Part shown: piece by piece, positions 2,721 to 48,030 of the stretch | How the letters are laid out: every line of letters begins with the position of its first letter | How positions within the stretch are numbered: the first letter of the stretch is position 1 | DNA from: Camelus ferus | Lineage: Eukaryota | DNA: 64,000 bases | NCBI RefSeq assembly: GCF_009834535.1 | Contig: NC_045715.1 | Span: 17,980,001-18,044,000 of the forward strand | Reading direction: 5' to 3' | The notes under the pieces: model-generated | Told to the model about the DNA's origin: nothing | The model's input: the letters and a program-made list of their open reading frames with translations, nothing else | The model's database searches: none | Translations under genes and position numbers: made by a program

Positions 2721-2796
2721 GGGGGAGGGTATAGCTTGGTGGTAGAGTGCATACCTAACATGCACAAGGTCCTGGGTTCAATCCCCAGTACCTCCA

Positions 2797-14773: not shown

Positions 14774-17111
14774 TATCCTTTTATTCCAAAGGCGATTTTT
14801 CAGATTTGTCCTGCCAAATTCTAAGGTCCACTACCATTCTTTAATGTTTTAATGTACTTATGGAGGAAGTAATTGTAGGAAACCTAGACAACGTGCCATA
14901 AACTGCGCGCTCACTACGGGCAAGTACAGTCCCATAGAACTATAAATTATGTAGTATCACATAGCCAGATACTAACTTACACTGAAAATGCCATTTCAAG
15001 TGTACAGCTTTCCTTTCCGTGTGTAGGTCTGCAAGTTGATCCTGCCTTTGATCCCGGATTTGGCGATCACCGCTTACTCAGAGCACAAAAGCATGCTCTG
15101 ACTACTTCATTCTGCTCAGTTTTTCTTTTCCGTTTTTCTTCTCTTTTTCTAAGTATATAGACATGTGTTTCTGAACAAAAAAAGGCTGAAGACAATGTGA
15201 GTTATCACAGAAATAATTATAAAGGGTTTTCTGGTTTGCTTTCTTGAAAATTGGTCCAATTTTCGCTGGAGGCTCTGAGCAGCGGGTGGGGGAGGTGGGG
15301 AAGGAGCCTGTGCTCCATCCTAAAGGCACCGAGGGAGAAGAACGGGAAGCCTTCTTTGACACGCCTTCCAGTCAATCTTGTCAGTTACTATACTTTCATT
15401 CTCTGAAAGTCCTAATCAATTTATAGTCCTTCGGTAGCATTCAGATTTAAGGTCCTCAGGGTTACAAGACAGAAACCCACTCCTCAATCCGTTAAGATGT
15501 CTTGACTCAGGACTGACGCCCCCTTTACAGCACCGTTTCCTCTTTCCCGGATGTCCCCGAGCATTGAGGGAGGAGAGGAAGTAGAAAGGGAAGAAAAGCC
15601 CCTTCTGGCTGGATGTGGTTTTGCTGCACGATGTAGGATAGCTTTAAGGGTGTTCGCTGCTGGAACAGATTTGTGGGGAAGTTAAATCTCTGGAATCTCG
15701 AAAAAGGGGCTGGGAGGGAGTGGCCTGGAGGAAAGGAATCAGTGGTCAGAGGTCACCAAGAAAACTGCAAAGTAGATGAGGCTGGAAAGGGAGGCAAGTG
15801 CTGGTTGAGGTGGAGAGTTTAGAAAGGGGGTGTTGTTGTCTAAGAGAGGAATGAATTTAGAAACCCTAGGGTTTGGGAGAAGGTGAGAACCCTAAACAGG
15901 TGCTCTGGATCACGGGGATAGATTTTCCATAATAGGGCAAGTGGGTACTTGGATGGACAATTAAAATCCAAAATAATACTTAAATTTACAAAACACTGTG
16001 AAGAGCCACTATGAAATAAGGAACTCTCATTCCCAGGTGCTTGACCCAGGGAAACCCCAAACACCACAGCTAGCTTTCACCCAAACCTGAGCTTTGATTT
16101 TTAGAGTGTTATGTGAAGCCTGTCCGTAGTGGGGAGCATGATAAGGACTCTTTCCCACTGAAGCTGAGACACTAGACCAAAATGAACTAGAAATAAACAC
16201 TCACACACTCACCATAGATGATTGCAAAATCTGCCCTGACCCTTGGTGCTGAACAAGGAGATTCCACCACTGAGAATTTGGCCTATAAGCCAGCGTTCAC
16301 ACGCATTTCTTTCAGCATTAATACCACAGGGATTCAAAGCACCTAGGCTGAGAATTTAATATAGAGATAACCCCGACTGGTTTAGTGCCCCTGAGCACCT
16401 GGTAAAAGCAAATACAAGTCCTCTCTCGAATAAGCTTCATTTTAGGCCTCCACAGATAAATATCAAAAAAAAAAAAAAAAAAATGAGCAGTTTCACAACC
16501 AAAATTAACCAGAAACACCATGAAACAAGTAACCATGACCAAGAGCAATGAACTATGAGAAAAAAGCTAACATAAAAATTTATTTAAAATATAGGTATTG
16601 AAACTGATGATTGAGAAATACTAAAAAAATTACAATGTTTAAAGTGTAAGATAACTGATTAAGAGTTAAAGAAGAATCTAAAGAATTGAGTCATGAAAGC
16701 TTATAAGGAGATTCTTGTGTGTCAAAATGCCCTAGTAAATTGTACCATGGCACTAGTTTTTTATTTATAAATGATGGTAAGAGTACTTACATGTCAATTC
16801 ATTTAAAAGATAATCATTAACTATCTCTGGCTTAGTCATCTATATGGACACTGGTGATTCAGAGAAACATGGTCGTCCTTGACTTCCTGAAGCCCTCAAG
16901 TTTGTAAGGCTGTCAAGGAAGCTTAGACTTAACTGCTTTCATATTCCTTTATCTTTCAATAAGAACCAAAAAAGTGTTTATCACTCTTTGCAAATCTACA
17001 GGCAGGTAAACAGATGGGCTTCTATGGGAACTACCAAATTCATTCAATGAAGGCGATAAAATTCATCCCAATTTTTGAGTAATAAATATTATACAGTAAT
17101 ATTAATACTAT

Positions 17112-17713: not shown

Positions 17714-19015
17714 AATCATAAGAAAATATGTAAGTATGACTTTTTTTTTTCCAATTTTGAACTATATATCTATCAGTGACCATAACTTGAGTTCTACAAC
17801 TATTTGCTTTTTTATGATTGTACTATCACATAGTTTTGTATATTTAGGTCACCTGTGGACCTAGAGATTATGAGATTTCTGATGGAAGACAATTTTTCAT
17901 ACTTTATTCAGATGAACAGCATCAGCAGTCTTCTTAATTTGTACTCCCAACTGCCCTCCAAACCCTAGGTGCAGGAAAAGAAGACTTAGGAAGGGTGAAG
18001 GTCAACATTGGGGGAATGTAGGTATTCTTCACCTTCATGTTGGTGGCGTGGGCATTTAGTGCTACATAGAAGAAAAAACTCAGTTTCTTGACATGAAAAC
18101 AGCACTTGACTTTCCTTTTCATAAACGATGAAATCTGCTGCCATGCACAGAGAACAGGAATTGTAGAAAAGTAAAGGAGTTATGCTTTAGGATTTTATTT
18201 AAGTTTTTAACAGTGAATGTTAAGTTGTGTTTTATAAATACAAAACAAGTATCCCAGCCAAATTATGGGTATTTTTTAAGAAAAGAAGGAGGAGGATCAT
18301 GGGAGAAAAAGAAAGGTGAGAGAAATTGAGGACTCAGAAAAAGTATGGAAGAAGTAGACTGCTACTACAGAAGGGAGAGAAAGGGCCTGGAGACCAAAGA
18401 GAAGCCTATAGCGGACTGTGATGGGAGAGAGGCAGGAAAAGAAAAGAGGGAGATGGCTAGATTGACCTTATGATATATTTAGTATTTTTGCCAGGTATAA
18501 GACTTGCAACACAACTGAAATATTCTCCACATTTCTTGGGTTTTCGGTTGACTGAATTGATTAAAATGGTATCATATCTGGGAGATGTTCTCTGACCAGT
18601 AGATGTAAAATGTCACCTCTCTCTTCACATTTTTTAACTTGCTCTATTCATTCTTCTTCATTATACTTAGTACTAATTGACATAAATTTATTTTTTGTTT
18701 CCCTTTCCCATTGTCAAGACTGTTAATCTCCATTGGGGCAGGGTTAGTATTTTTTACCACTGACTCTGTAATACCTTGGCTGTTCCAGACACAGACTAGG
18801 CTCTCAGTAAGTATTTGCAGCACGATGTGATGAATTAATTGAAATACATATATGTCTATAACAATAAAGATAGAGCACAGGGCTGATTTTTGAGAATATT
18901 CAACTGAATGAGTGACTCAGCCTTTCTGAGTCTCACTTTCTTCATCTATAAAAGGAGAATAAAAATCATACACTACTTAGAGTTATTTTAAGGACTAAGA
19001 TAATTTATGTAAGGA

Positions 19016-19140: not shown

Positions 19141-19620
19141 AAGTTTAACAAAAATTGAAACCGTTTTTTTTTTTGTTTTTTTTTTTTTGTTGTTGTTTTT
19201 TAAGAAGAGATCATTTGTGTAAAGCTCTTAAAAAGTTATGGACATTTAGTAAGCACTTGGCAGTTGTATTTTCCTTAGTCACTAAATTAAAACGAAAATC
19301 AGAGAAGCTAATTCTTTTCAGATCAAAAATTAAGAGAGAGAATATAAGCTTTTGATCTATTTGAATTCTACCCCGAGGGGTAATTGGGGGATTTGGAACA
19401 AAGATTACATTATTGAGGAATATCTCTTGACTGAGTATGATTTAAGTCATTATCTGTTCATGTTAGTAATGACTAAAGTGTGCATAACACTGGAGGGGAG
19501 ATTCCTTGTAGCACATTATACAAGCATATGTAAACAGATCCCTCTTCATTGTGTAGCAAATATTAGTGCTAATGGCAAAATGGCACCTAACATATAAACC
19601 TTTTTTATTTCTTCAGTCAG

Positions 19621-20012
19621 GGGAGCGATATGAGTGCAAGAAGAACTGAATGCAAGCAGAAAGTGAAAATGAGAATCTGGCTAGAGAAGTTATGAAGTAT
19701 GATGTCCAATCTGCCTGAGATGATTGATTAGTCTGTATATCCCACACAAATCCTATCCATCTGATTTACTGCACATTGATTTATCAAAAGGTGATCATTA
19801 CCTGAGTGGAAGAGCATAAACAAGGTGTTTTAGCTTTTTCATTGTATTTATATTTGAATTAAAGAAATAGAATTTACTTCTGTTACAGGCCTAATTACAG
19901 GAATTCACTACTTACTGTGGACTACCTACCTTTGCTGGGGAAAGCCTGAATGAAAGGATGGCAAGACATCTGTAAATGAGATGCTATAATTAATAAAATC
20001 TGTGGATAATTG
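19621..20012 (+). other. Distal non-coding terminal exon for spliced, polyadenylated H2BC5 mRNA (unit A)
   Basis: Branch point CTAAC 19587-19591, pyrimidine tract, AG at 19619-19620; AATAAA 19992-19997; sequence resembles my recollection of the human H2BC5 variant-2 3' UTR; 3' end approximate. Confidence 0.75.
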
Positions 20013-20211
20013 GAATGCTTCATTCATTGTTGATTCAAATCCTTCTCCTAAGATCTCTCCCCCTTCTAGACATACAATTTATTTATTTTTTCATTTTATT
20101 TTTTGGTATTAATTTCTCAGTAGATAAGTCCTAAGTGCTATTTTGCCTTTGGTAACAATCTTGAATCAAACGAGTTAGTTTAGCTAAGCTGACATTTGAG
20201 AGGTCACCTTC

Positions 20212-20539
20212 TGTTGCCAAATCCTGTTTCCTGTACCCTGGTATCTAATCAAGGCTCAGAGACACAGAATTTTGGGGAAGAGGAAAGAATAGCTTTATTT
20301 CTTTGCCAGACAAAGGGGGTCACAGTGGGCTACTGCCTCAGGAGTGCGAAGCTGGTTTGGGGAAGAGTTGTGGGGAGTTTTATAGTGAAAATCCAAGGAA
20401 CAGTGCTTGGAATAGGACGCAGGGCTGCATTCCTTCCTTCTTTGATACAATCACAGTGGTAAACGGTAATCTGGTGACAAGGTCTTCTGTTCCTGGCAGT
20501 GAACAAGGCATATCTCCTGACATTCCTGTGCCTGGAACA
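20212..20539. mobile_element. ERV1-type LTR fragment (paralog 46776-47100)
   Basis: TG...CA ends; gaaagaatagctttatttctttgccagacaaagggggtcacag motif; no TSD found. Confidence 0.45.
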
Positions 20540-20589
20540 AAGGAAAGGAAGGGGTGTATATGTTGGGAAAAGAAAAAATACGTGCAGTT

Positions 20590-20591
<2 letters not shown>

Positions 20592-20626
<35 letters not shown>
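20592..20626 (+). repeat. (AC)17 microsatellite, absent at the unit-B paralogous site
   Basis: Read directly. Confidence 0.95.
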
Positions 20627-20629
<3 letters not shown>

Positions 20630-20749
20630 GCTCAAAAATGTCTCAGAGTGAGAAGCCATTTGAGGTTACCATTAAGTGACTATAACCACTGTGCCCACTG
20701 TGCGGTTGCACTTCAACATCCGAATTAAGTGGAACACAGTATTTTGAAG

Positions 20750-20954
20750 CAGTTTCAAACTTAAGTGTACGCTAAAATCACCTGAAGGATTTTTTAAAAA
20801 AGATCGCTTTGAGATCACTCTGAGGGCCCCACGTCACAGTGTTCTGATTCACTGTAACTGGAGGAGGACCCAATCATTTGGATTTCTAAATTATGAAGGT
20901 GATGCTGATGCTGATGCTGCCGGTCCAGGGATAACACTTGGAGAACTGTGCTTT
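20750..20954. mobile_element. MER5A-like hAT DNA transposon (paralog 47297-47467)
   Basis: aaaatcacctgaagga...gattctgattca-like core...ggtgatgctgatgctgccggtcca...acacttggagaac. Confidence 0.75.
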
Positions 20955-21099
20955 AGGACATGGGGTTTCCCTGAGATGATACTACCAAACAGCTGCACAA
21001 AACCGAAAAAACACATTGAGGTTTAAACTGGAAGTCAGTACTGAAAATTAGTACCTCCTCCCGGTGCGGCCATGCTGGGGTGCAAAGTACAAAGTGGGC

Positions 21100-21520
21100 C
21101 CTACACGCCCCGCCTCTGCCGGCTCCTAGTAACCAAGGCCCACACGCCGACTCCCTCATTGGGCAGTCCTGCCACGCCCCTCCATGCCGGCTCCCTCATT
21201 GGGCATTCCTGTCACGCCCCTCAATGTCGGCTCCCTCATTGGGGCGTCTCGCTCAGCCACGCGTCCCTCCGCTCCCCGCAGAGCCGCAAGCTACGTATAC
21301 ACCGGGTAACGCCATTCGCGCTCCTCCACTCCGGCCTGCAGTTTGAACCCGCGAGGTTTCCCTGTGGCCGCCCCTGCTAGTGCGCAGACTCTGCCGACGC
21401 AGCCTCTCTCTTCTGGCAACCACAGGACGCCGGAGAGTCCGAACGATGCGCTGGGTCATTCGCAGATAAAGACACAGAACCGAGCAGTCTGAAGACCAAG
21501 AAGCAAGGCAACAGCCCCCC
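21100..21520 (+). promoter_or_regulatory. CpG-rich orphan promoter: 3x40-bp tandem repeat with inverted CCAAT boxes, CACGCCC GT-boxes and a CHR-like TTTGAA
   Basis: ATTGG at 21158, 21198, 21238; TTTGAA 21342-21347; high CpG density; direction inferred from motif order. Confidence 0.7.
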
Positions 21521-22146
21521 TCCTCACCCCCTCATTGGTTTTTCTCCTCCTCTCCCAACTTTTTTCTGAGTTGCCATTTCCTTCATAGCTAATCCCCAGG
21601 AGGCCTGCCTTGCACCACCTCTGCTTATTGTCAGCACTTTTATCGGGCACTTTGTGTGAGTATTAAGTGCGTGTATACGTGGATGCACGCAGAGCCTGCA
21701 TCCATTAGGCATAGCGGACACAGGGTCTACGATCCAGAGTACTTTTAGAGGCTCGCGAAGATACTTGAATTTCTTCTAAACTTTTAGGTCGACGGAAACA
21801 TTCTAATATATTGATGTTTTGATTTTTATATAATTTTAGTAATAATATCCTTTTTGTTATTATTTTTATGGAGGAAGGGATCCAGAACGGCAGATGCGCA
21901 GGACCCACAACAGATAATGCAGACTTGAGTGCGGGTAGCACGGACCCGTTTTCAGTTGTTTCTACTTAGTTAAAAAAAATTTTTTTTAATGGTAAATAAA
22001 CACCCAGGCAAATTTTCAAGTGCTTTCTAGATGTTAACTCGTTTAATTCCCATAAAACATCTGTGAACTGTTATCCCAGCTTTACCTGCTTGTATGAATT
22101 ACCCAAAGTTCAAAATAATTTACCCAATGTTACCCAGCTAATATAT

Positions 22147-22283
22147 GGGAGAGGGTACATAGCGCAGTGGTAGGGTGCATGCTTAGGATGCGCAAGGTCC
22201 TGGGTTCAATCCCTAGTATCTCCATTAAAAAGTAAGTAAATAAATAAACATGATAACCTCCCCCGGCAAAAAAAGAAAGAAAG
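22147..22283 (+). mobile_element. tRNA-derived SINE (shared with unit B, 48631-48760)
   Basis: gagggtacatagcgcagtggtagggtgcatgc...gggttcaatccctagtatctcca. Confidence 0.85.
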
Positions 22284-22589
22284 ATATAGATACAGATATG
22301 GCGGAGGGAATTCTAACCCAGCCTGGTTAGCTCCAGGGTCCCTGACCTAAAAACCATTACACTAAAGATACTATCTTGAGATACCTCTAAACAATTAATC
22401 CAAAAAACAGCAGGTAAGATAACCACTTAACTCTAGACAGGCTACTCTGAGCCCTCTTCTCCACTTGGCCTTTAACAAAGTTGAACAAGACTTGAACACT
22501 ATTATACTGCACTAGCATACTTTGTAACAGCTCAAGGCCTAGGATGACCCCTCTTACAAAGCCTACCCCAAGTCAAGACCTATTCCTTT

Positions 22590-25150
22590 TATCTTTTTCC
22601 TTTTCTGTTTTGTCTTTGTTAGTTTTTTAAGAATCATCTTGACTATTTTTGCTCATCAACATGAATTTTACAGTGCTTTATCAAAAAATCCAGTGAGTCT
22701 TTGTGGCATAACATTGAAATTTTAGGTTATTTTTAAATGTATGGACATTTTAGCATATTGAGACATCCCCAAACATAAAAATAGTCCAGCATACATCACT
22801 TAATTTAGGTGAGTCTTGTTTCATATCCTTTAACAGCACTTCATAGTTTTATTCTTAGAGATCTGCAGTACATTCCCTTGGGCTTAGAATCCTTAGAATG
22901 TGTTGTACTGTTGTGAATGATGTCTGTTTTATTTATTTCAATTCTAGATAGATCATTGCTTGCTAATGTATAGAAAAGGCCATGAATTATTGTTTTGTGG
23001 TGAGCATTTATTCACCAACCCTGTTGAGCTTATTAGAGCTAATTGTTTATAGCTTCTCCTGGATTTTTTACAATGACATATTATTTTCAAAGAATAAATA
23101 TAACATCTTTTCTTATTGAATTCTTACCCTTCTCATTTCTAGTCCTTGTCTCATCGTTTTGGCAGAACCCTTGGTGCCATGCAGAATAGGAGTGATACCA
23201 CGGAATTTTTGTCTTTCTTTTGGCTCTTTGGGGAGTCTTCTAAAATTATACCATTAAATGTTAAGCTCACTGTAGCTACTCCTTATGAAGTAAGTAGCTA
23301 CTACTTCTCGTTCTAGTCTGTTGAAAAATGTTTGTGATGAAGGAGCATTATATTCTAGCAAATACTTTCCCAGTATCCTTGGAGATGATAACAGTTTTTA
23401 TCTATTAATATCTTAAATTTGTGATGTAAAACACATGGAAGCATTCTTGGATAAACCCTACAAGACATACTATTGTTTTTTAAACAGTTTGGTCTCTTGC
23501 TTTCCATTTGTTTACATTTAAAATAGAGATTTATTTATTTATTTTTTTTAATTTGTAAGTAAGATGAGGCTATAATTTTCTCTCAATCTGTTTCTTTGTG
23601 TGTGTGTTGTTCCTGTTTAGTTTAGGTGAAGTTATAAAACTTGAGAAGAAAAAAAGGATAGCTATTTTTCTATTGAAACAGCTTATGTAAAATAGGGATT
23701 ATCAATTACTTAAATTTCACTAAAACCTATAAAACCCAACTTTGCTTGGAATTCTTTGGGTTGAAGAATATAGGAAAGATACATTTTTAAACCCCCATCA
23801 TATTTCCTTAATCATACTTTGTTTTCTCAGCCTATTCTTCTTCTTGAAATTATCGTTTTCTATTAAGAATAATTTTTTTCTAAAGATTGTTCATAGCATT
23901 CTCCTGAGTCTTTCTATCTACCTTTTGGTAGCTAATTTCCCTTTTTTATTCCTATAACTTATTTTCCCCTCCCTCCCACACACTTTTTTTCCTTAACTAG
24001 TCTTTCTAAAGGTTTGCCTATTATCATGAGACTTTTCAAAGAACAAGCTTGTGATTTATGGATCATCTCCATTTTTTCTATTTAATTAATTGTTCCTTTT
24101 AAATTTCAAAAATTGACATTGAGAATAATATGTCAACATACAAATCCATGAGAACCTATAAACAATTAGATCTAATAGAGCTCAACAGGATTGATGGATA
24201 GATGAGAACCACATAAAAAATTATGGCCTTTCTATACATTAGCAGAGACCTATCTTGAATTGAAATAGAAAAACCAGGCATCATTCACAAGAGTGCAACA
24301 CATTCTAAGAATTCTAAGTCCAACTTTATCTGCTTTATTTTGATTTATTCTCTTGTTCTTTTTCTAGCTTTTTTTTTTTTGATAAATACCTATTTCATAT
24401 GTCTTTAGTGTTTCTTTTCCTTCATACATACGTCTAATATTGTATATTTCCATTTCAGTACCACTTCTGATACATCCTACAATTTTCACATGTATTATTC
24501 TCATTCATATTTGTCTCAGAATATAAGTTTCCCTTAATGATATTCATTCTAATCCATGAAATTTAGAGGTGTGCTTTTAGTATCCAGTAATATGGGAAGA
24601 TTGTTTTAGTTTTACTATCTTTAAAATAACCTTTTTTTTTCCTCTTTAATTAGACGATGAAAAAGAGTACAGTGTTTATGAAACTGATTCTTTGGTATCT
24701 ATTGTAACTTTTTCTAAAACCAAGGTTGAATTTTTGAAATGATTAAATATGTGCTTTCCAAAATTGTTTATTCTCTACGTATTAAGTGCAGGAATCATAG
24801 ATCAAGTTTACTCATTGTGTTGTTCAAATATTCTGTAACCATGCACATTGTTCTTTGCTTGTTATGTGAATTTTTGAGTAGTATATTGAAAGTTTACCCT
24901 ACAATCATAAACTTGAAGTTCCCCCAATTCTGTCATTTATTGCCTTACGTAGTGGTTGAGTGGTCAGGTGCATACAAGGTCTTGAATGTTACATCTTATC
25001 AGTACATCTTTATTTGGTCACCGTGGAGTGTAGGTTTTTTTTTTTTTTCTAGAAGTTCTGTTTTGTTATTTTTTGATTACCCTACTTAGATTTTCCCTTG
25101 TTCCTTGATTGTATTATTCCATCTTTATTTCTTTAACCTTTCAGTAAATA
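22590..25150 (-). mobile_element. Ancient L1M fragments (paralog ~49060-50870)
   Basis: T-rich antisense-L1 character and decayed L1M motifs; boundaries approximate. Confidence 0.5.
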
Positions 25151-26679
25151 GTTACCTTACTGTTTCTGATCATTTCAATATCTGAAATTCCTAGGAGAGA
25201 GCAAGGGGATCTAAGGCTCCTGTTTATCTGAAAGCCTGACTCTCCAGTGTCTGTTTTCCTCTTCTGTTTGTTACCATTTATTATAAGCTTATACGTGGTA
25301 ATCCCAAGTTCCTAGTAGAGTGCCTGGTAAGTAATAGGTGCTCAGTAAATAATTGCTGAATAAATAAATCACAATCTGTATGAATCTAGAGAACTTGAAT
25401 TCAAGATGCTTCCCTCCTGAAGGGGTTTACCTTTGCCTTCACAGGGCACTAGGAGGCGCTCTGAACCTACATCACTAATTTCACAACCCTTTCCTTGAAA
25501 CCCCAGATTCTATGTAAGTGGTTAAATCCCAGTGGCAAATTTCCTCTGTCCTCCTCCAGAGTTCTGCGGAGACAGACAGGTTTTCTTCTTGGGAACCTTT
25601 GCTAGATTAACCTTATTGTAACCTATCCTTTCTTCCAGGGTCCTGGGTTTAGTTTAAGGGTTTCGAATCCCCTTCCCCAAGGAGCAGATATTAATTGACA
25701 AAGTTCAGAATCTTGATAATAATAGTTGCCCCAGAGAACCCAGTCTAGTGTGTTTATCTCTCTGGTTTCAGCGCCTAGGTTTTTCATTGCTTTGCATATT
25801 TCAAGGCATTTTCTCAGTTTCTTCTTAGCTGGGCAATGATGTGCTACTGTTTTGTTGTACTTTATCTGGTCTTTAGGTGTTTTCCTTCAAGATGGCTTTG
25901 TATCCAGAATATCTTGTTTTCTGTATTGGAAATAAGTTTTTACAGTGTCCCTCTCTATCCCTAATACTTTTAGCTTAAAAATGTGTCTGCTATTAATATT
26001 GCTAACTTGCTCTCGGTAAACATTCCCCAGGCATGTGTTCCTCTCATTCTTATTTTTTATTTATTGTTATTATATAAATATATGCATAATTTATCTTCAT
26101 TCAAATAAGAGGAGCACTTTTAATGCATATTTTTATTACACATATTCTTTTGCTTTATAAAAAAATGTAACCATCTAAAAGATAAACTACTGTACCTATG
26201 CAAGAACTCTAGCATATACTTTTCTGAGGGAGACAAAAGAAAACCTATAAAACTTCCAGGTGACCACAATCATACAGGACAATAACTAAGCATATATTTT
26301 ATTTGAGTTAATATCTACCCTTATTTTGGAGTTACATTTTTTGTAATCCTAAAAGAAGAAATCACTGTTATTGAGTCTGGAGACAATTCATATGGGGAAA
26401 TTATTTAATAAAGAGTGTGGTAGTCAATTTTGTTTTAAAATTAACAATCCTGGGGACTAGGTAACACCTTTCACCTCTTTGTCAAATGATCACTGCCTCA
26501 GAGGAGTTTAGAACAATTGGGATTCAGGAGCTTTGCCTAGACAGACAATTTTCATGGTATCCAACATATATTTCTATAAATAATTATATTTCATTAATTT
26601 CACTTAATAATACACTAAACATAAAACCAAATGTGTTTAATATTTTACTTTTTTTAAAAAACCAGACCCAGCAAGATTT

Positions 26680-27430
26680 AAAGGAGATGTCTTTAGTTGT
26701 AACTAACATTATTGACCTTTAATCTGAGCCTTGTGATCCTAGAAAATAGTGATTATTAAAGAAATTCTCCCCCTTTTTGTATTCCAAAAATAATTTACTG
26801 CAAGGAGGCACTGTTTTCACCTATGATTTGGAAAAGATAAAAAAAAAACAACTCCTGGTTGGAAGGGTATATAGCTCAGTGGTAGAGTGCCTACTTAGCG
26901 TGCAAGAGGTCATTGGGTCAATCCTCAGTACCTACATTTAAAAAAATAAATTTAAAAAACAACAGCAACTCCTTGTATATCTAGGACACAACCAGACACA
27001 GACCCCTCCCAAATTCCCATTCTTTGCCTCAAAAGTGATAACCTGAACTAATCCATGGAAACAATATACTTTGTCAACCAAAATTTAGTTACATTTTCTC
27101 TATCCCCCCAGGTCCCAGAGCTTTGACCCACCCTCAGCCTGAGCCACTTTACTACCCCTCCTTAAGGGTCCCTTCTGATAGTTGGCTGGACTCGGGGTAA
27201 AACATTATCTGTTTTCCTAATATCTAATCAAGCCATTTTTTCATCCTACCATTCCTATGTCATACTCAATTCTTTTTAGTCTTGTTTGCTCTTCCCTAAG
27301 AAAATCTGTTTTGGCTTCAGCCAAAGAGAAGCTTACAGATCATATGCAGTAGTCCGTTTCACCTCCTATCAACAGTCCTTTCAAAAATAGCCTCTCCTTA
27401 CCAAGTCTGAATCTTTTTCATTTAAAACAG
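26680..27430. mobile_element. MER34-like ERV1 LTR containing a SINE (26861-26972)
   Basis: cccccaggtcccagagctttgacccaccctcagcctgagc; SINE flanked by a caactcct target duplication; both shared with unit B (SINE 52557-52669). Confidence 0.55.
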
Positions 27431-29541
27431 CTCATGGACTATTTTGTCTGCCCTGTACACTGTGTGTGTTTCTACTAAATTCATGTAGGTATGGAATGAA
27501 CACTCTAGTTTGGGTCAGTCCTCACCACTCTTCAGTGTTATATAGATCTGTTCACCTGTGTAGAGGTTATAACCTCTATTCATGGTTACTACATTTAAAT
27601 TAGTTGCCTGGTCCTTTTGAGACAGGATGGAAGGGGGCAGGGCACACCCATTAAAAGAATAACACAGCAATGAGCACCAAGATGGCCAAAGATTCAATTC
27701 CCAGTCGATCTTGAGGCCCAAGATAGTAGAAGATTTGACTTCCAGCAAACCTTGACCTTCATTATATGCTCATTTTGCAATAATAGCATGGTAAAGGGCA
27801 CTCCCATAGACATTATAACAGAAATTTTGGGGTGAAATTTCATAGGTTGGCTGAAATATGAGTAAATTTAGAGAAATCGTCGACCCTAAAATTATTGGGT
27901 ATTGACTTAACTCTACAGCTTTGGCTCTTAATCAGTGGCTTTCAACTTTATCTATAATGGAAATATATCAAAATCTTAACTAGTAAATTAATAAGTTGGT
28001 GATATGGTGAAGCTAATATCAACTAAAAATAGATAAAGCTAATAGCAATCACTGAATCCTTCTCTCTATGATTTACATTATCTATATTTTGTCTCTCCAA
28101 AATACTGTCTCATTCTCCAGATAAATTTCTCTTTTTGCCCCACTCTTCCCCATCGGCCTCTTTTTCCACTAAGTCTTTTTCTCTCTCTCTCCGCCTTTTC
28201 CATTTTTTCTTTAATCTAGTTGTAATTTTCTTTCTCATTTTTCTCTCTCCTCTTCCTCCATGGACTAGGTATATAAGAGAATCAACGTTTTTTTTTTCAT
28301 TTTAACATTCTCCTTCAGTCACTTAAAAAATGCTTTATTTGCCATGCTTCTAAAGTTAGAAGAAATCACAACAAACTTTTCTCTTTTTTTCCTAAAACAG
28401 CCCACCAAACGCCAGCGGGAGTCTTATGAAGGATTCAGATTTAAGCCAGACTGCTTTAATCATTATCCTGGCTCCACAATTTACATGTTAATGGGATTTG
28501 AGGGAAAAGGCCTTGTCTCATGTTCTCTGGTTTTCTTTTCTATAAAATGGAGGGCAAAAAACAAACACAAACAAACAATCAGGTAGGGTTTTATGATTAA
28601 ATAAAATAATACATATAAAGCATGTTAGCTATTATTCCAAACATTGCTACACGGGCTAAATTGGGGAAAAGTAAAAATAAAAGAGTGAATAGGTCTTCAG
28701 GAGATTTCCTCCTCAATATCAAAGTGAGAAAAACAAATTAATTACTTTGTGCCCTTTTTGTTTGCCAGCTTACCACGTACAGCTTGCAGCCCTTCATTTA
28801 CTGCCAGCAGGGGAAGCCAAAAGGTGGGGCAGCATAGAAAGTCTTAGAAACATCTAAATCAAATTCAGGGGAAACAGGTCTCAATAGAAAGGAAACATGT
28901 TAATGGAAGAACTAGCTAAAAAGCCGGTTTCTGATAGTGATAATAGTAAATTGTAAATAAAAGTATTTATCACCATGTTCTCCCGTTTCAGTTGTTTTCT
29001 GGGGTTTTTGTTTCTGTTTTTAACTAAGTAGAAGGAAGAATAATTTCTGATCCGCTTTAGTGGCTAACCTGGGTGTGATTTGATCGTTTCCAATACGAAG
29101 CACTGCAGCGATACTGGCTACGAAATTCTTGCCTTTATTACCTCCCTTTAAGCTACGTAACTTTAAACTTTGACATTTATTTTCACGCTATATTTCTACA
29201 TTTTTGGTATAGTTGGAAACACTGTCTTAGGAATTTTTTCGATTACCGTAGATCGCCTATTTCTTCTCAGTTCTTCCTTTCCCTGTCACTAATCTAGAAT
29301 CTGGATTCAAAGGCAGAGTGACAGCTTTTCTAGGAGTTGTAAACAGGCCTTGCAAATCGGAGAGATAACCAGTCTATGAAATCTGCCTTTTTGATATTTC
29401 AAAATACTGTAGAGAGTGCTATCTAGTTTATATCCTTAACAAACTAATCTGAATTGTTATAAACAACTACAGAACTTTTAAAATAATTTAACTAGATTAA
29501 AGTAGCTGGCCTGATTGCTGGAAAACTGTCTCAGGAGATAG

Positions 29542-30160: not shown

Positions 30161-33100
30161 GCACTAGCAAGTGGTATTTCCTGAAAACTAGGCTTGCAAT
30201 TACTGTTGCAGGTAGCACTTAAAAATGCAGTTAGAAAGCGAACGGTTCTTGGGGTTCAAACTTGCATATTGTTCTGATTACCGTCCCCTGTACGAGGATT
30301 CCCATCAGCATAAGCGAACATGGATCTTAGCACTAACGGCCAGCTCTTCGACTTCTTAGTCACCTTTATGGAACTTACACAGATGCTCTGTAGGCTGGTA
30401 GCGAGCTTCGGGAAACTGGTCTGTTTTTGGTAAAATACTACGTTGTAGCGTCAAATAGGTCAGAACAACATTTGAATCTCCCGCTATCCAAAAGCGGAAC
30501 TTCCTCTCTGATGCTGCGGATCCTCCGCCTGCCCATGTTTTTTTGTGGGATCTATTTCCTTCTCTCTCCCCTAGCCCTTTGCCTAGGGCTTTCGAGTCCT
30601 GGCTAAGTATTTTATCTAAGATTCTTTACAAACCTGGTAGATTGGCTGTAGTTCTCCAGTAACGGAAGAGCAGTTATTTTTACTGTCCTTTTAGTCACTT
30701 TACTAAATTTTTAAAAAGCTCTTATCACTGGATTTTTAAAAAATTTTTAATACAGTCATCTCCTCACTCCACAGACTTTTTGCAAACCTACAAAACTCAC
30801 AGAATTTTCAGTGTTCAGCTCACCTGTGTGGTCACATAATATAAAGGTCGGCTCTGAAGCTTTCTAACCACCCTTTTCTGTAACTTGCAGTCTTTTCCGA
30901 ACCCATCCCCCTCTCCTGCCTCCAGCTCCCCTTTCCCTGCACAGTTCAGAAACCGTGGAGCGATCTTGACAAAAGAGGGACCCACGGCCGGTTCAGAACT
31001 CAGAGAGGAAGCACCGTGGAAGTAGGAGATGACTTTTAACTGTTGTGGGCTGAGCTCTTGAGATTTGGAAGCCTACGGTTTGTGACCACATAATGCCCAA
31101 GAGACTAAATCCTGGGAAATAGAGTCGGGCGCTTCCCTCATTTCTCCGGAAACTTCAAGGTAGGGACTTCCTTCAGGAAGTTAGGTGGAAAAGGTTCGGT
31201 GGCTTGCATCACCCATAAATGGAAATATCAAACCCACCCAAGAATGGCTACCACTGTCCTTAAACATTCCTAACCAGCCTCCTGGACCAGTCTATCTGGT
31301 CTCCCATTTATTGTCTCAAAAACATAAATAAAATAAGCATAAAGACACAAACAAGTCTTTATTTTTCAGGTTCCCAAATTACAACAGAATTTCAACTTTT
31401 CTCATCACCTTGATTTTAGTTTGAGGTAATACTGACACTCCTTCATCCATAGCGAATTTCGTTTTCATGCCAAATTCGCCATGTTTTTTTGGCTTTGTAT
31501 CTTTCCTTCACAGCCATTGGATGGTTCCGAACTTGACAAAACTAGAAATTCTGTGCTATTGCCACAGGCCCTTCATTGTCCAGCCCTCACCTAACTTTCC
31601 AAGCCAACCTCAGAGGACTTTTTCTTTTGTTTTTGTTCATTTCTTATTTTTTGGTTTGGGTTTTTTTGGTTTCTTTTTTCTCCACCTCTACAGTTTTTCA
31701 ACTACCAAGGCCTGGCTGCCTGCTTGTATTCACTGTGGGATGGCAGCAGCAGCTGATTTGATGACTTCAGCGCTCTTCATTTATTGATATGGCTTGCATT
31801 ATTTTTCATTCAGAGATGTGTAAGTTTGCAATTCAGAGGCAAAAGGGGACTGGACTTAAAAATTTTGAAAATTTTTAAAATAATTTAATGTCAGCATGGC
31901 ATGAAAATAGGTTTCAAGAAAGACTTTTTCAAACTGGTGTGATGCCTAGTAGGCTGAGAACAAGAGCTTTGGACACAGAAAATGGAGAGCACTGGGAACT
32001 CAGGTTACAGATACTAAAGGGCAACCCACACACCATCTGGACACCTTCAGGGCTCATGATTATTACCTCTTCCGTGGGGAAAAACCTCCACTTAGAGCTG
32101 AGCCCAAAGTGTGAGAATTATGTTGATACCCTTTCTCTTGTGCCACTGTATCTCATTGATGCAGACATCTGCCCAAATAGGGCAGATTTGTTTGCCTTGA
32201 AGTTGGGAAAACTGACAAAAGAAAAAGGCCTGAGTGTTCAGCATTTCCCTAAGCATGGTCAACAAAAAAGTTTCAAGAGATTTTAATTTGTTTAAATTAC
32301 CTGAAATTGTTTTGTTATGTTTGCATCCAAAAAACTTTCATTAATACACTTGCTACTTAAGAATATATGTAAACATGTTTCTTTAAACACGTACATAAAC
32401 CCATTATCCTATGTTGTCACACTCAGTCCTCACGAAAACATGAAGTTTCTCCTACATTATAGATAAGGGAACAGTGGTTAGTAACTTGCCACAGATCACA
32501 AAGAAAATGGCAGTTCAGAATTTCAACTGTATGTCTTCATGGTTCAAAAATGCCCGTTTCTTTTCTCTGAGCCTCTTTCATGTCATGAGAAATAAGAACA
32601 CTAATAATAATAACAATCGTCAAAACACAGCATTTTCGAGGGCATGTACTGGCCAAAATGCTTAAAAACATTTAATGTTATTTACCCCCTAACCTATCAG
32701 AGAGGATCTACTGTTATCTCCAGTTTACAGATGAGTAAGTATGCACAGAGAGGTTAAGTGACTTAACCAAAGACACAAAGAGTACAAACTACCTTCTGTA
32801 CAAGTTTTCCGGTTCCTTTTTATCTTTGAAGAGGGATATTGGGACTGTTTCTTGTAAACAGAACAAATGATTTACTCAGTGACACTGACTACTAAATATT
32901 TAGACCCTACTATATATTTACCAAGAATAGCAATGGAAGGTAAGTTCAAAGAAAGCCTTAAGAAACAGTTCACGGACTTCTGCCTTAAACAGCCTAAAAA
33001 TAAACTCCCCACTATTTTTATTTACTCCTAAATCTTATGAGATACAGTTTGGGCCTTAACGCCTCTGAGAATCAAAATGGGTTATCTTTCTTGCATTCTA

Positions 33101-34846
33101 GTTACAGTGTAAAGGACTCATCTCACTTGTCAAGAATATATAGATCTATTGCACACAGTGAATAAATACATGTGCCAAATTTACTGCTGTTTGATGTGTT
33201 CTTTATGCATTTGGTCTGCCCTTTTCTCTGTAGCCCTAAATTTTGGATTTCTACCTCAGACTCTAAAATCCTAGACTCCAAGTTGTTCACAGGAATCCAT
33301 GGAGCCCTGGGAATTACTTGAATGAGCTCCATGAAATACGTTTTATACACACACACACACATATAAGTATATGCACACACAGATCCTCAAAGGAACTTAT
33401 GATCCACATACTGTTAAAAACTCCTAAGGGGAGACAGTACTTTGAAATATCCAGATTACAACTGCTTAAGGCATGTGGATATTCCACATCCCTAACAGGT
33501 AACGAGCCCTTATTCTGTGTTCTAGCATGGAACACCATGGAAAGAGTTGAAAAAAATGAGTTGAAAAAAACATACTTGGTATGGTAAACTTTAGTTCTTA
33601 TAATAGAGGCTCAACAGTAAATTAGCTTAAAGACAGTTAAGTCTTGTCACTTGGAACAGATCCACTGTGATCAGTCCAGCTCTGTGGTGCAGCACTGCTC
33701 CTCCTGATCGGGATCTGTTGTTCCTTCCATCATTGTTCTGCCATCCCTAGCGCCTGAAGTTCTCTACTGGACCAGACAGTATCAACACCTTCATAGAAGG
33801 CAGCAAGAAAGATGAAGGCTCGAAAGCCTGGGAATGTCTTCTACTTATGCTTATTAGGGAGCAGGTAGCCACGTGCTCACCCCTGCTCTCAGATAAGCCA
33901 GAAATATTGCTTCAGGCCCGGGAGTTATCTGTCCAGGTATTCCTTTTCTTACAACAAAGAGAACAAGTTTTAGTTGAAAAAATGCCAGTTGTACTACAAT
34001 AACCTAAGATTTTTTTCACAGAATAAAACCCATTCTGAGGACACTAAAGAATACAGTGGCAGGCTGACAGTCCTGAGAGATTGTAGACAGTTTACAACAG
34101 GTAACAAGAAACGGGTAATGCACTTGAGAACTGCTTGTTTTGCCTCATTTTCTGCTGTGAAGGGAACAAGACTGGAAATCATGAAAACCTGGGTTTGAAA
34201 GGCTCACTCCAGCCTTTTTGTCAGGGTATGTGGCACGCAACCAGTTTATTAGAGTATTTCAAAATTGACTGTAGTTAAGTCTGTTACTCAAGATAGAACC
34301 AAAATAACTTGGTAAACATAAACCGGCATACTTATACCAGACATAGATGCATCAATAGGTTCTTTTTGATTGTAAAACAGTAGCTCTGGATGAATGGGAA
34401 AAATAAGTCAGCCTGTCTCCATTCCACTTTTAAACAAGAGGAGACCTCACACTTTTCTCTGGTAGAACTTGACTGTCTTCAGCATTACCAGTCCTCCCCT
34501 TTCTCAGGTCCTCTTTATCATGTGACTTTTAACAGGTTTTTTTCAATATCCTTAGCTGAAGAGTGTCTACATTAGTTCTTTTTCCCGATCTTCTACCACC
34601 AGACTTGACCTCGTCTTCCATAAAACTTCCCAGCTGGGTTTCGCTAACAGTTGTGCAAAATAGTTTTATCACCATAGATTAGCCTTCTTGCTCTAAAGAT
34701 AATACATCGCACATACGCCAAACCGACTATAGATTAAGTGCAAACCTGCTAAGGCCTGAAACATACGTAAATCACGTTTAAGTTTGCAGGTTGTCGACAG
34801 TACTTACCTGTTTAAATACCTTCTTATAAAACTAAAACAAAGCGTT

Positions 34847-37047: not shown

Positions 37048-38867
37048 CTCCAGGATCTTGAAAGTCTGGAAAGATGCTGGGTTTCAAAAACGTGCAGAGA
37101 GAAACATTGGGAAATTCCATGAATGCTGGAATGAAACTGACATATTAGTAAAAGTACTCTGATAGAGCTAAGGGTAAATGGAAACAATTTTCTCCACTTA
37201 TGAATAGTAAGAGGTCATTTCCTCTTCCTCTTAGAGAGTTTTCTTGGAGAAATAGTGAGTCTGAGTTTTCACTCTTCCCTTAGGAATACAGTGACATTTT
37301 TCTAGGGATTAAGCCCAGTCTCCAGTTTTTACAATGGAAAGAAATCTCCTAGGTTGTGAGGCGAATAACCTCTAGATATGTAAAAATATACATCTGTTAT
37401 TAGCTTAGGAGTCTTTCACAACATACACATGAGAGGTGAACATGTCAAGGTGAATGGGGCGATACCATGAAGATTCTCTACACTTAGATGCCTAAGAGAT
37501 AACTCTTCCTTTGTGTTGCTGCAGAAAACCAACTATAATGAGTTAAGGTCATTTTTAGCTTAGGAATGCATGAATCAATAACATGTAAATATACACTCCA
37601 AGTAAAAATGTTTATATTGAACTGATTTCTCCTCTCATATCATCCATTTCAATTGCTCTTAATTTTTAATTTTTATTAATGTTCATTAATGTTTTGATGT
37701 TTAACTTGAATGTACTGCATGAAGTGATCAGTCATTTGTTGATTTTGATGGGACCAAAGAGGAGTATTAAACCCTTACCTCTTGGGCTTTGTTCTGTCCA
37801 TTCCCAGCATTTCTGTTTTCCATAGTCCTAGGGAAACATGCTTCAAAATAAACATAATATTTTTTTAAAAAAAAACATAGCTTCAGAGTGAAAAAAAAAT
37901 GACTTTCTACCATCAGTCTATTTCCCACTGAATATAAATCATAAGCTATAATGCTTCCTATAAACTTATATCCTTGCTTAAGTAAGAAATGTAGTAGTGA
38001 ATATAAAACATACTTGCTTTTAAATTTCTCTCTCTTAAAGAAATTCTGTATAAGCATGTGTGAAAGTGTTGTACATGTGTATATTCCTTAATTCTGTTAC
38101 TTGAAAGCTTTGGTAAAGTTTACCTTCCTGAACAATGACAGACCTCTGTACACAAGAGCTGGTGAATATTTTAATAACTGATCCTCCCTGATAAAGTCAA
38201 TGTAAATAAAAGAATTTTTTAAACCCATAAAGGGGCCCAACTCTCATTTACATCTTTACCTGGAAGTCCTCTGCCATCAGCTATTGCAAAACAGGCCCAA
38301 CCAATATGTCAAAAGCATCATTGATCGTTGCTTTTGACATTTTCCTAAACAAATTTTGAAAGATTGAAGCTCCCCAGTTAACTAACACTCGAAATACTCA
38401 CAAGGAGCTATGATAAAGCTTTTTCAGACAAAACAATAACCTGTCTTATCAGAAATTGCTGTTATTCCAAGGATCCTTTACTATAGCTGTTGTAGAGAAA
38501 TCCTGAAACAGCCTGTGTTATTTCTCCTCATATGAAGCATATTTTGGGGGTAAATCTCAATGAGAACCAAGCAGTTGTTGAACGGATGGAAATCCAAGAA
38601 TGTGTAGAATGTCACTGGAAAGCAAGCTATTGAAAACACAAAGGGAAGAATTTCTATTTTAAATGAAAATCAAAAAGTTGCCTTCCTGACCTGTGAATCT
38701 CTAGGAATGTCAGGGGCTTTTGAAAAAGGCTGGGACCGACGTGATAAACACTGGAGGAAGAAACTACGAAGGTCTCAAACCTTGAGCTGTCCTGTTTCAT
38801 GATAGAATATAAGTGGCGTGATTCCTAAGCAGGAAATTTTAATATTTTGGCTTTCCTGAATTGTAAC

Positions 38868-47609: not shown

Positions 47610-48030
47610 CACTACATGCCCTGCCTTTGCCGGCTCCCCTCCACCCCTCCACGCCAACTCTCTCATTGGACCCTCCCGCCACGCCCCTTCCATACCGGCT
47701 CCCTCATTGGGCCGACCCGTCGCGCCCCTCAATGTCGGCTCCCTCATTGGGGCGTCTCATTCAGCCACCCGTTCATCCGCTGCTCGCAGAACCGCAAGTT
47801 ACGTATACACCGGGTAACGCCATTCGCGCTCCTCCTCTCCGGCCTGCAGTTTGAACCCGCGAGGTTTCCCTGTGGCCGCCCCTGCTAGTGCGCAGACTCT
47901 GCCGACGCAGCCTCTCTCTTCTGGCAACCACAGGACGCCGGAGAGTCCGAACGATGCGCCGGGTCATTCGCAGATAAAGACACAGAACCGAGCAGTCTGA
48001 AGACCAAGAAGCAAGGCAACAGCCCCTCCT
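47610..48030 (+). promoter_or_regulatory. Unit-B copy of the triple-CCAAT / CHR-like promoter
   Basis: ATTGG at 47665, 47706, 47746; TTTGAA 47850-47855. Confidence 0.7.

What the first reader, a model, noticed from the sequence alone, without database searches (positions are those of the whole stretch)
21100..21670. Orphan promoter with three CCAAT boxes on a 40-bp tandem repeat plus a CHR-like element
Seen: the unit gccggctccctcATTGGgca..cctg.CACGCCCctc.at repeats three times with ATTGG at 21158, 21198 and 21238, followed by TTTGAA (21342) in a CpG-rich patch. A GTGAGT donor-like site lies at 21656. No ORF-bearing gene is adjacent. In unit B the spacers have diverged but all three ATTGG (spacing 41 and 40), the TTTGAA and the GTGAGT (48165) are kept. 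Established: multiple NF-Y CCAAT boxes plus a CHR (bound by DREAM/MMB via LIN54) is the architecture of late cell-cycle promoters, though their spacing is usually nearer 30-33 bp. Inference: this may be a cell-cycle or germline promoter inside the histone cluster, driving a lncRNA or an upstream-spliced H2BC6 isoform. I recall a human H2BC6 model starting ~12 kb upstream of the CDS (unchecked).
Basis: partly seen in the sequence, partly recalled or inferred. Interest (0 to 1): 0.7.

Follow-up and report, generated by a model that had tools for sequence, protein, structure and literature searches.

The report
Transcribed CCAAT-repeat CpG island between histones
The three-CCAAT tandem repeat is real and lies in a small, transcribed CpG island between two histone H2B genes, but the only RNA whose direction can be read runs on the opposite strand to the one proposed, and the cell-cycle (CHR) and H2BC6-splicing ideas find no support, so it looks like an ordinary NF-Y-type non-coding RNA promoter.

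Summary
Observation confirmed. A 40-bp unit repeats 2.5 to 4 times. ATTGG lies at 21158, 21198 and 21238, TTTGAA at 21342 and GTGAGT at 21656. All recur in the duplicated copy B (47665/47706/47746, 47850, 48165).

The repeat sits in a 440-bp CpG island (GC 0.63, CpG o/e 0.86) kept in both copies. The three CTCATTGG cores carry none of the 15 A/B differences in the repeat (p=0.025). TTTGAA and GTGAGT are at chance density.

RNA evidence changes the reading. One RNA-Seq contig joins 21055 to 20531 across a 523-nt intron that is GT-AG only on the minus strand. It has a strong acceptor and a downstream AATAAA, all kept in copy B. On that strand the boxes read CCAAT and lie 55, 95 and 135 nt upstream of where the contig ends. 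An RNA contig crosses the proposed GTGAGT donor unbranched. GC skew across 21050-21650 also fits minus-strand transcription. Transcriptome-sized runs also hold the repeat, so a second, more distal start is possible.

The 98%-identical block downstream is one of at least seven such patches in the duplication, so it is probably gene conversion.

Best reading: an NF-Y/Sp-KLF CpG-island promoter and first exon of an unconstrained minus-strand lncRNA. Start sites are unmapped. The scan had not noted this element before.

The parts
21103..21252 (.). Tandem repeat of a 40-bp unit. There are four units: the first is degenerate and the second is 30 nt long. Each unit has CACGCCCC followed by GGCTCCCTCATTGGG.
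   Evidence: TRF 21146-21243, period 40, 2.5 copies, 91%; units listed; pattern test.
21158..21162 (-). CCAAT box 1 (ATTGG on +), core CTCATTGG 21155-21162. It lies 55 nt from the end of the minus-strand RNA contig at 21103.
21198..21202 (-). CCAAT box 2, core 21195-21202, inside an 18-nt run identical to copy B.
21238..21242 (-). CCAAT box 3, core 21235-21242, inside a 36-nt run identical to copy B.
21173..21180 (.). CACGCCCC (CACCC/GC-box type, candidate Sp/KLF site). It recurs at 21104-21111 and 21213-21220. The box at 21213-21220 has one A/B substitution.
   Evidence: the factor assignment is inferred from the consensus only.
21040..21480 (.). Small CpG island (GC 0.63, CpG o/e 0.86, 36 CpG). 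The copy B equivalent is 47545-47990 (o/e 0.92).
   Evidence: CpGs kept in copy B: 12/18 in 21040-21286 and 19/19 in 21287-21524, against 4/40 in the 21700-28296 background.
21055..21103 (-). Observed 3' part of exon 1 of a spliced minus-strand RNA. The donor GT is at 21054-21053 on the minus strand.
   Evidence: X14 RNA-Seq contig of 294 nt: its letters 245-294 lie here and its first 244 letters lie elsewhere. Donor context. The donor is kept in copy B at 47563-47562.
20532..21054 (-). 523-nt intron: CT..AC on the + strand, which is GT..AG on the minus strand. The acceptor is preceded by a long pyrimidine tract.
   Evidence: The loose end maps to 20501-20530 uniquely. Of the four possible cut offsets only this one is canonical. 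X14 depth is 0 over 20940-21041 while the DNA-like run X18 has 15.7.
20288..20531 (-). Exon 2 of the minus-strand RNA. The extent is inferred from the contig length, and only the last 30 nt were shown. A minus-strand AATAAA lies at 20299-20294. The RNA is non-coding: the 56-aa ORF is not kept in copy B.
   Evidence: A/B identity of exon 2 is 0.858, the background level.
21287..21524 (.). Block 98% identical to copy B (95% on to 21655, about 70% after 21680). Held in RNA runs. No RNA structure signal.
   Evidence: It is one of at least 7 patches with 96% identity or more in the duplication, so it is probably a gene-conversion tract.
21489..21677 (.). Stretch covered by two RNA-Seq contigs in X14: 21489-21644 (copy A specific) and 21615-21677 (shared by A and B). 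Strand is not determined directly. They cross GTGAGT unbranched.
   Evidence: The contig ends coincide with A/B differences at 21614 and 21678.
21342..21347 (+). It is at chance density and 99 nt from the nearest CCAAT.
21656..21661 (+). Not seen in use.
47610..47760 (.). The same repeat in copy B, with ATTGG at 47665, 47706 and 47746. Copy B is also expressed: the contig shared by A and B has about three times the depth of the A-specific one.

Best explanation
The feature is a small CpG island in the spacer between the H2BC5-like and H2BC6-like histone genes. It was copied along with the 26-kb segmental duplication. It acts as the promoter and first exon of a short, spliced, probably polyadenylated non-coding RNA on the MINUS strand, which runs back towards the 3' end of the H2BC5 distal exon.

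Shown: an RNA-Seq contig joins 21055 to 20531 across a canonical minus-strand GT-AG intron. That intron is silent in the same run. RNA also covers 21489-21677. The island keeps its CpGs in both copies.

Inferred: the three boxes read CCAAT on the minus strand and lie 55, 95 and 135 nt upstream of the contig's end. That is the usual working distance of NF-Y. With the interleaved CACGCCCC (Sp/KLF-type) boxes they most likely keep the island nucleosome-free and drive TATA-less initiation near 21105-21140. Because transcriptome-sized runs also hold the repeat, and the GC skew keeps minus polarity up to about 21650, a second, more distal minus-strand start near 21650-21700 probably exists, which would place the repeat inside a longer first exon. 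The RNA product itself looks unconstrained.
For: The splice joint and silent intron are. Donor, acceptor and AATAAA are conserved in copy B. Runs holding 21290-21660 (two labelled RNA-Seq, the rest guessed to be RNA from their size) are. Ten runs guessed to be RNA hold 100% of the words of 21104-21289, of which only 4% are shared with copy B. CpG island metrics and CpG retention (12/18 and 19/19 against 4/40, Fisher 2e-5) are. The CCAAT cores are spared by substitutions, p=0.025. GC skew is negative over 21050-21650 in both copies and flips at about 21650. NF-Y peaks lie -50 to -100 from TSSs (PMC3730095).
Against: No start site was mapped. Contigs carry no strand information, and only one junction fixes direction. 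The contig end at 21103 has depth 3.8 and could be a coverage drop-out. If the repeat is transcribed through, the boxes lie inside the exon for those transcripts. The run searches pick the best holders among many runs, and there was no silent-stretch control for the repeat. No orthologue outside this genome could be obtained, so conservation rests on paralogues that also undergo gene conversion. NF-Y and Sp/KLF binding is assumed from consensus alone.
Confidence: 0.5

Rival explanations
1. The repeat has no promoter role. The minus-strand RNA starts only near 21650-21720, and the whole island (21677 to 21055) is one long first exon. The CCAAT and CACGCCCC boxes are then passenger sequence from a tandem duplication, kept by chance or by gene conversion.
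For: Ten transcriptome-sized runs hold all sampled words of 21104-21289. X6, X12 and X9 hold both the repeat and the block. The GC-skew domain 21050-21650 matches the RNA-supported extent. Conversion patches are common in the duplication. The p value for box retention is only 0.025.
Against: The spliced X14 contig dead-ends at 21103, where the DNA-like run shows no graph branch. The sequence right of 21680 is AT-rich, about 70% identical between copies, and the CGCGA-containing motif there is lost in copy B. The repeat part is diverged (about 86%), so it is not inside a conversion tract, yet it keeps its boxes and 12 of 18 CpGs.
Confidence: 0.25
2. One reading: a plus-strand promoter with inverted CCAAT boxes, then CHR, then a TSS near 21325-21380. 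Its first exon ends at the GTGAGT donor (21655/21656) and is spliced to a lncRNA exon or to H2BC6, under G2/M (DREAM/MMB) or germline control. It could coexist with the minus-strand RNA as a bidirectional promoter.
For: The high-identity block runs from a TATA-like GTATACA (21296) to about 25 nt past GTGAGT. Six runs from five studies hold the same 73-76% of the words of 21290-21660, which would fit a defined boundary near 21380. NF-Y boxes work in either orientation. X1 and X4 contigs holding the block were dropped by the human-likeness filter, which would happen if they were joined to a conserved histone exon (speculative).
Against: The RNA contig 21615-21677 crosses the donor unbranched. 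GC skew over 21325-21650 runs from -0.07 to -0.53, the opposite of a plus-strand first exon. TTTGAA and GTGAGT are at chance density. Spacing is 40-41 bp against about 33 bp, and the CHR lies 99 nt from the proximal box. 7.6% of random promoters also have a conserved CHR (PMC3287175). The block's identity is explained by conversion.
Confidence: 0.1
3. The element is a relic of a retroviral LTR or another transposon whose U3-like enhancer carried tandem CCAAT units, as primate LTR12/ERV9 does, and was later co-opted as a promoter.
For: LTR12 U3 has 5-17 tandem units of about 41 nt, each with an NF-Y CCAAT box, and gives rise to lncRNAs (PMC11853044). 40% of human NF-Y sites lie in LTRs (PMC3730095). 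The unit length here is 40 nt.
Against: No TG..CA ends with a target-site duplication are shared by both copies; the only 5-bp candidate is absent from copy B. The units contain no GATA or GTGGGGA motifs. There is no other copy in the 64-kb window. The DNA-like run assembles 20940-21244 as one unbranched contig at flank depth. The metagenome scan returned only unrelated repeats. LTR12 is primate-specific.
Confidence: 0.07
4. There is no dedicated function. The island is a decaying relic, for example of a lost divergent histone promoter, and the RNA is low-level by-product transcription.
For: Exon 2 and the ORF of the minus-strand RNA are unconstrained. X14 depths are low, 3.8-14. There is no RNA structure signal.
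Against: CpG content is retained in both copies after about 14% divergence. Splice and poly(A) signals are kept in both copies. The stretch is assembled in many independent RNA runs from at least 6 studies.
Confidence: 0.08

Closest known systems
NF-Y-dependent TATA-less CpG-island promoters, which are often bidirectional
   Same: It is a CpG island. It has multiple CCAAT boxes next to GC/CACCC boxes. The boxes lie 55-135 nt from the end of a spliced RNA contig, within or near the -50 to -100 window reported for NF-Y (PMC3730095). RNA is found on both sides of the boxes.
   Different: The boxes arise from a recent-looking 40-bp tandem duplication rather than from independent sites. The start sites are unmapped. 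The product is an unconstrained lncRNA, not a protein-coding gene.
CCAAT/CHR late cell-cycle promoters (cyclin B2, CDC25C, CDK1; NF-Y plus DREAM/MMB via LIN54)
   Same: There are three CCAAT boxes and one TTTGAA hexamer within 200 nt, both kept in the paralogue.
   Different: Spacing is 40-41 bp, not about 33 bp. TTTGAA is 99 nt from the proximal box and at chance density. The direction of the demonstrated RNA puts TTTGAA upstream of the boxes, not between the boxes and the TSS. Cell-cycle data are lacking (PMC3287175).
ERV9/LTR12 U3 enhancer repeats (primates)
   Same: Tandem units of about 40-41 nt, each carrying a CCAAT box. The region is transcribed and yields non-coding RNA (PMC11853044).
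   Different: There are only 3-4 units. The companion motif is CACGCCCC instead of GATA or GTGGGGA. There are no LTR ends or target-site duplication. It is low-copy and in a non-primate genome.
Spliced, polyadenylated H2BC5 (HIST1H2BD) isoform with a distal second exon
   Same: It is the same intergenic spacer.
   Different: It is a different transcript on the other strand. No junction links the feature to either H2B gene.

Membership tests
CCAAT/CHR G2/M promoter (NF-Y + DREAM/MMB) | Two or three CCAAT boxes about 33 bp apart | tested here: not met
   Spacing is 40 and 40 bp in copy A and 41 and 40 bp in copy B, against about 33 bp in PMC3287175.
CCAAT/CHR G2/M promoter (NF-Y + DREAM/MMB) | CHR (TTTGAA-type) close to the TSS, downstream of the proximal CCAAT at a conserved short distance | tested here: inconclusive
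   TTTGAA is present at 21342, 99 nt from the last box. The hexamer occurs 1.42 times per kb in the window. No plus-strand TSS is shown. For the minus-strand RNA it is on the wrong side.
CCAAT/CHR G2/M promoter (NF-Y + DREAM/MMB) | Phylogenetic conservation of the CHR, DREAM/MMB binding and G2/M-peaked expression | not testable with these tools
   Only a paralogue is available, and the hexamer lies in a probable conversion tract. There are no ChIP or cell-cycle data.
NF-Y-type CpG-island promoter | CpG island that stays unmethylated in the germline | tested here: met
   GC 0.63 and o/e 0.86-0.92 in both copies. CpG retention is 12/18 and 19/19 against 4/40 in the background. Methylation state is inferred from this.
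NF-Y-type CpG-island promoter | CCAAT box(es) about 50-100 nt upstream of a mapped TSS | tested here: inconclusive
   The boxes lie 55, 95 and 135 nt from the end of the spliced minus-strand contig. A contig end is not a TSS, and the repeat is itself present in other RNA runs.
NF-Y-type CpG-island promoter | A stable transcript arises from it | tested here: met
   There is a spliced minus-strand contig with a silent intron in the same run, plus RNA contigs over 21489-21677. Many RNA runs hold the stretch.
NF-Y-type CpG-island promoter | NF-Y occupancy and CCAAT-dependent activity | not testable with these tools
   This needs ChIP and reporter mutagenesis.
LTR12/ERV9-like LTR promoter | Tandem U3 units of about 41 nt with CCAAT plus GATA and MZF1-type motifs, 5-17 copies | tested here: not met
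   The unit length matches (40 nt), but there are only 3-4 units and no GATA or GTGGGGA. The companion motif is CACGCCCC (PMC11853044).
LTR12/ERV9-like LTR promoter | LTR ends (TG..CA) with a target-site duplication, and membership of a dispersed multi-copy family | tested here: not met
   Only chance-level candidates were found, and none is shared with copy B. There is no other copy in the window. The DNA-like run shows an unbranched contig at flank depth. A genome-wide count was not possible.
Upstream alternative first exon of H2BC6 | Use of the 21655/21656 donor and a junction to the H2BC6 5' region | tested here: not met
   The X14 contig 21615-21677 crosses the donor without a branch.

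The most novel reading that the evidence does not exclude
The island is a conserved NF-Y-driven bidirectional promoter embedded in the histone cluster. Its minus-strand RNA converges on the poly(A) site of the H2BC5 distal exon, with the two 3' ends about 260 nt apart. It would then regulate the choice between stem-loop and polyadenylated H2BC5 mRNA, or insulate H2BC6 from read-through, possibly in a cell-cycle or germline-specific way. Its retention in both copies of an old duplication would reflect that role.
Probability: 0.08. Interest if true: 0.6.

Novelty: new member of a known kind. Interest (0 to 1): 0.28.

Why it matters
If correct, it adds an unannotated non-coding transcription unit, with a tidy NF-Y/GC-box tandem promoter, to the main histone cluster. 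It also shows that the spacer between H2BC5 and H2BC6 holds convergent transcripts. That is of modest, local interest for how polyadenylated histone isoforms are terminated or insulated. It does not open a new mechanism: CCAAT-rich CpG-island promoters producing unconstrained lncRNAs are common. The practical value of this follow-up is the correction. The strand is the opposite of the one proposed. The CHR and donor motifs are chance-level. The striking 98% paralogue identity is best explained by gene conversion.

Tried and rejected
2. In the second call the contigs of X1 and X4 were dropped by a filter, so only X14 (RNA) and X18 (DNA-like) gave data.
3. Rfam at gathering and permissive thresholds found nothing in 21000-21800. 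Folding the conserved block gave z +1.3 and +0.5. A structured small-RNA gene is rejected.
4. Exact-product look-ups of two ORFs and a homology search with the 102-aa ORF, both aimed at fetching transcript or orthologue contigs, found nothing.
5. Metagenome scans for orthologues or a transposon family also failed. The protein-pattern scan gave none. The two-box DNA pattern gave five loci, all unrelated by BLAST.
6. The LTR-end and target-site-duplication search gave chance level only.
7. The 98% block as evidence of purifying selection is rejected, because at least seven patches of 96% identity or more exist, two of them 100% over 600-700 nt of spacer.
8. A coding role for the minus-strand RNA is rejected, because its ORF is not kept in copy B.
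9. The tRNA-Ala nt downstream in copy B is a tRNA-derived SINE head present in both copies, not a Pol III gene tied to the island.
10. The nomenclature and poly(A)-histone papers say nothing about an upstream H2BC6 exon.

Full report
SETTING. It holds H1, H2B and H4 ORFs, partly masked by N, and a histone 3' stem-loop. It contains a segmental duplication of about 26 kb. Unit A runs from about 12.7 to 37.4 kb and unit B from about 39 to 64 kb, each ordered H1, H2BC5-like, spacer, H2BC6-like, H4. Median identity between the units is 86%. The finding lies in the spacer of unit A. It is 6.4 kb downstream of the H2BC5-like coding sequence and 8 kb upstream of the H2BC6-like one. Its twin lies at 47600-48170.

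OBSERVATION.
- TRF reports a 40-bp unit with 2.5 copies and 91% matches at 21146-21243. Read by eye there are four units from 21103 to 21252, each made of CACGCCCC followed by GGCTCCCTCATTGGG, with the first unit degenerate.
- In copy A, ATTGG sits at 21158, 21198 and 21238, TTTGAA at 21342 and GTGAGT at 21656. In copy B the positions are 47665, 47706, 47746, 47850 and 48165.
- The two-box pattern never occurs in shuffled sequence.
- The patch is a small CpG island: 21040-21480 has GC 0.63 and o/e 0.86, and copy B has o/e 0.92.
- TTTGAA (1.42 per kb in the window) and GTGAGT (0.47 per kb) are each expected about once or less in 570 nt by chance. Their presence carries no weight on its own.

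PARALOGUE CONSERVATION.
- The repeat part (21141-21250) is 86% identical between copies, which is the background level. Even so, the 15 differences avoid all 24 positions of the three CTCATTGG cores (p=0.025).
- Immediately downstream, 21287-21524 is 98% identical and 21525-21655 is 95%. Identity then falls to about 70% after 21680.
- This looked like strong constraint, but a scan of the whole duplication shows at least seven patches of 96% identity or more. Two of them are 100% identical over 600-700 nt of spacer, at 15.4-16.2 kb and 32.55-33.3 kb. Patchy gene conversion is therefore the simplest explanation, and the block is not evidence of function.
- CpG retention is more informative. 12 of 18 CpGs in the diverged repeat part and 19 of 19 in the block are kept in copy B, against 4 of 40 in the 6.6 kb downstream (Fisher 2e-5). 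By the established behaviour of methylated CpGs, this means both copies have stayed unmethylated in the germline, as active promoters do.

RNA EVIDENCE.
- Two labelled RNA-Seq runs (X11, X14) and a dozen runs guessed to be RNA from their size hold 73-100% of the sampled 31-mers of 21290-21660.
- Ten runs, also only guessed to be RNA, hold all sampled words of the repeat itself, 21104-21289. Only 4% of that stretch's 31-mers are shared with copy B, so this is copy A's own repeat.
- One read-laying run was lost to a filter. In the other, two runs gave nothing because their contigs were filtered out.
- X14, a labelled RNA-Seq run, gave three contigs. The first is 294 nt long. Its last 50 letters lie on 21054-21103, and its first 244 letters end in a 30-mer that maps uniquely to 20501-20530. 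Given the 3-nt ambiguity at the joint, only one cut is canonical: skipping 20532-21054, which reads CT..AC on the plus strand and so GT..AG on the minus strand.
- The minus-strand acceptor follows a long pyrimidine tract.
- The 244 nt would end at 20288, six nucleotides past a minus-strand AATAAA at 20299-20294.
- Donor, acceptor and AATAAA are all kept in copy B.
- X14 has zero depth over the intron at 20940-21041, where the DNA-like run X18 has 15.7. The signal is therefore RNA, not contaminating DNA.
- The other two X14 contigs cover 21489-21644 (copy A specific, depth 4.7) and 21615-21677 (identical in A and B, depth 14.3). Their ends fall exactly at A/B differences (21614 and 21678). Both copies therefore appear to be expressed.
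- The second contig crosses the proposed GTGAGT donor with no branch, so that donor is not detectably used in this run.

DIRECTION.
- The splice junction fixes a minus-strand RNA.
- GC skew gives independent support. The plus strand is C-rich (skew -0.07 to -0.53) over exactly 21050-21650 in both copies and turns positive at about 21650. CpG-island promoters are typically G-rich on the non-template strand downstream of the start; this is from my own knowledge, not checked here. That fits minus-strand transcription across the whole island and is the opposite of what a plus-strand first exon at 21325-21655 would show.
- On the minus strand the boxes read CCAAT. They lie 55, 95 and 135 nt upstream of the point where the spliced contig ends (21103). 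NF-Y peaks are reported at -50 to -100 from TSSs (PMC3730095).
- A GC box lies just upstream of 21103 on the minus strand.

WHAT REMAINS OPEN. No start site was mapped, and two pictures fit.
- Picture (a): a proximal minus-strand start near 21105-21140, driven by the CCAAT and CACGCCCC units. This is supported by the dead end of the X14 contig at 21103, where the DNA graph has no branch, and by the retention of the boxes.
- Picture (b): a distal start near 21650-21720, which puts the repeat inside a first exon of about 620 nt. This is supported by the repeat being present in RNA runs and by the extent of the skew domain.
- Both starts may be in use.
- A caveat on the run searches: they return the best holders among many runs, and I had no silent-stretch control for the repeat region.
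- A plus-strand partner transcript, making a bidirectional promoter, is not excluded. Six runs from five studies hold the same 73-76% of the block's words, which could mark a boundary near 21380. Nothing positive supports it, though.

THE PRODUCT. The spliced minus-strand RNA carries a 56-aa ORF in copy A. In copy B its ATG is lost and the frame is cut to 24 aa. Exon 2 is 86% identical between copies, the background level. The conserved block has no RNA structure signal on either strand, and Rfam finds nothing there. So the RNA is non-coding and its sequence is unconstrained. What is maintained is the island and the processing signals. Its inferred 3' end (about 20275) lies about 260 nt from the poly(A) site of the H2BC5 distal exon. 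That exon has an acceptor near 19617 and an AATAAA at 19993. Human HIST1H2BD is known to use a downstream second exon (PMC3661734). The two transcripts therefore converge.

COMPARISON WITH KNOWN SYSTEMS.
- The late cell-cycle CCAAT/CHR architecture is not met. Cyclin B2 boxes are about 33 bp apart with a conserved distance to the CHR (PMC3287175). Here the spacing is 40-41 bp, and the hexamer is 99 nt away, at chance density, and on the wrong side for the demonstrated RNA. In that paper 7.6% of random promoters also had a conserved CHR within 200 bp.
- The closest formal look-alike of a 40-bp tandem CCAAT unit is the U3 region of primate ERV9/LTR12, which has 5-17 units of about 41 nt bound by NF-Y (PMC11853044). 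Here there are only 3-4 units with a different companion motif. There are no LTR ends or target-site duplication shared by the copies. There is no other copy in the window, and the DNA-like run shows a low-copy signature.
- The feature is best filed as an ordinary NF-Y/GC-box CpG-island promoter of a lncRNA, whose box array arose by local tandem duplication before the segmental duplication.

VERDICT. It is a new member of a known kind, of low to moderate interest. The scan had not noted this element before on other DNA.

Noticed in passing
window 15400-16200, 17750-18250, 19650-20000, 32550-33300, 33550-34400, 37050-37350 (unit A coordinates): These patches are 96-100% identical between the two duplication units, against an 86% median. 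Two are 100% identical over 600-700 nt of non-coding spacer. This looks like recent patchy gene conversion, or an assembly collapse, within the histone cluster duplication.
   Followed up: partly
window 22150-22290 and 48625-48760; also 59984-60057 (-) and 2725-2796 (+): The tRNA-Ala(AGC)-like calls are heads of tRNA-derived SINEs: a tRNA-like part followed by an A-rich TAAATAAATAAAC tail. The one about 460 nt downstream of the feature is present in both copies. The one at 59984-60057 sits in an insertion of about 147 nt specific to unit B. They are not genuine tRNA genes by Rfam score (28.9 bits for 48635-48706, below the gathering score of 29).
   Followed up: partly
window 20824-20960 and 47342-47460: A fragment that looks like an old interspersed DNA-transposon repeat lies just upstream of the island. 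It tripped the human-likeness filter of read laying at 20884-20939. The identification is from memory only.
   Followed up: no
window 22865-23593: About 730 nt present in unit A but absent from unit B: an insertion in A or a deletion in B inside the spacer.
   Followed up: no
window 21531-21538: A fourth CTCATTGG, outside the tandem repeat, lies in a pyrimidine-rich stretch of copy A. Copy B has CACTGG there, so it is not shared.
   Followed up: partly
window 19617-20015 versus 20275-20531: The plus-strand distal exon of the H2BC5-like gene and the minus-strand lncRNA exon 2 converge. Their poly(A) signals (19993 on +, 20299-20294 on -) are about 300 nt apart. This could be a site of transcriptional interference or termination.
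   Followed up: no
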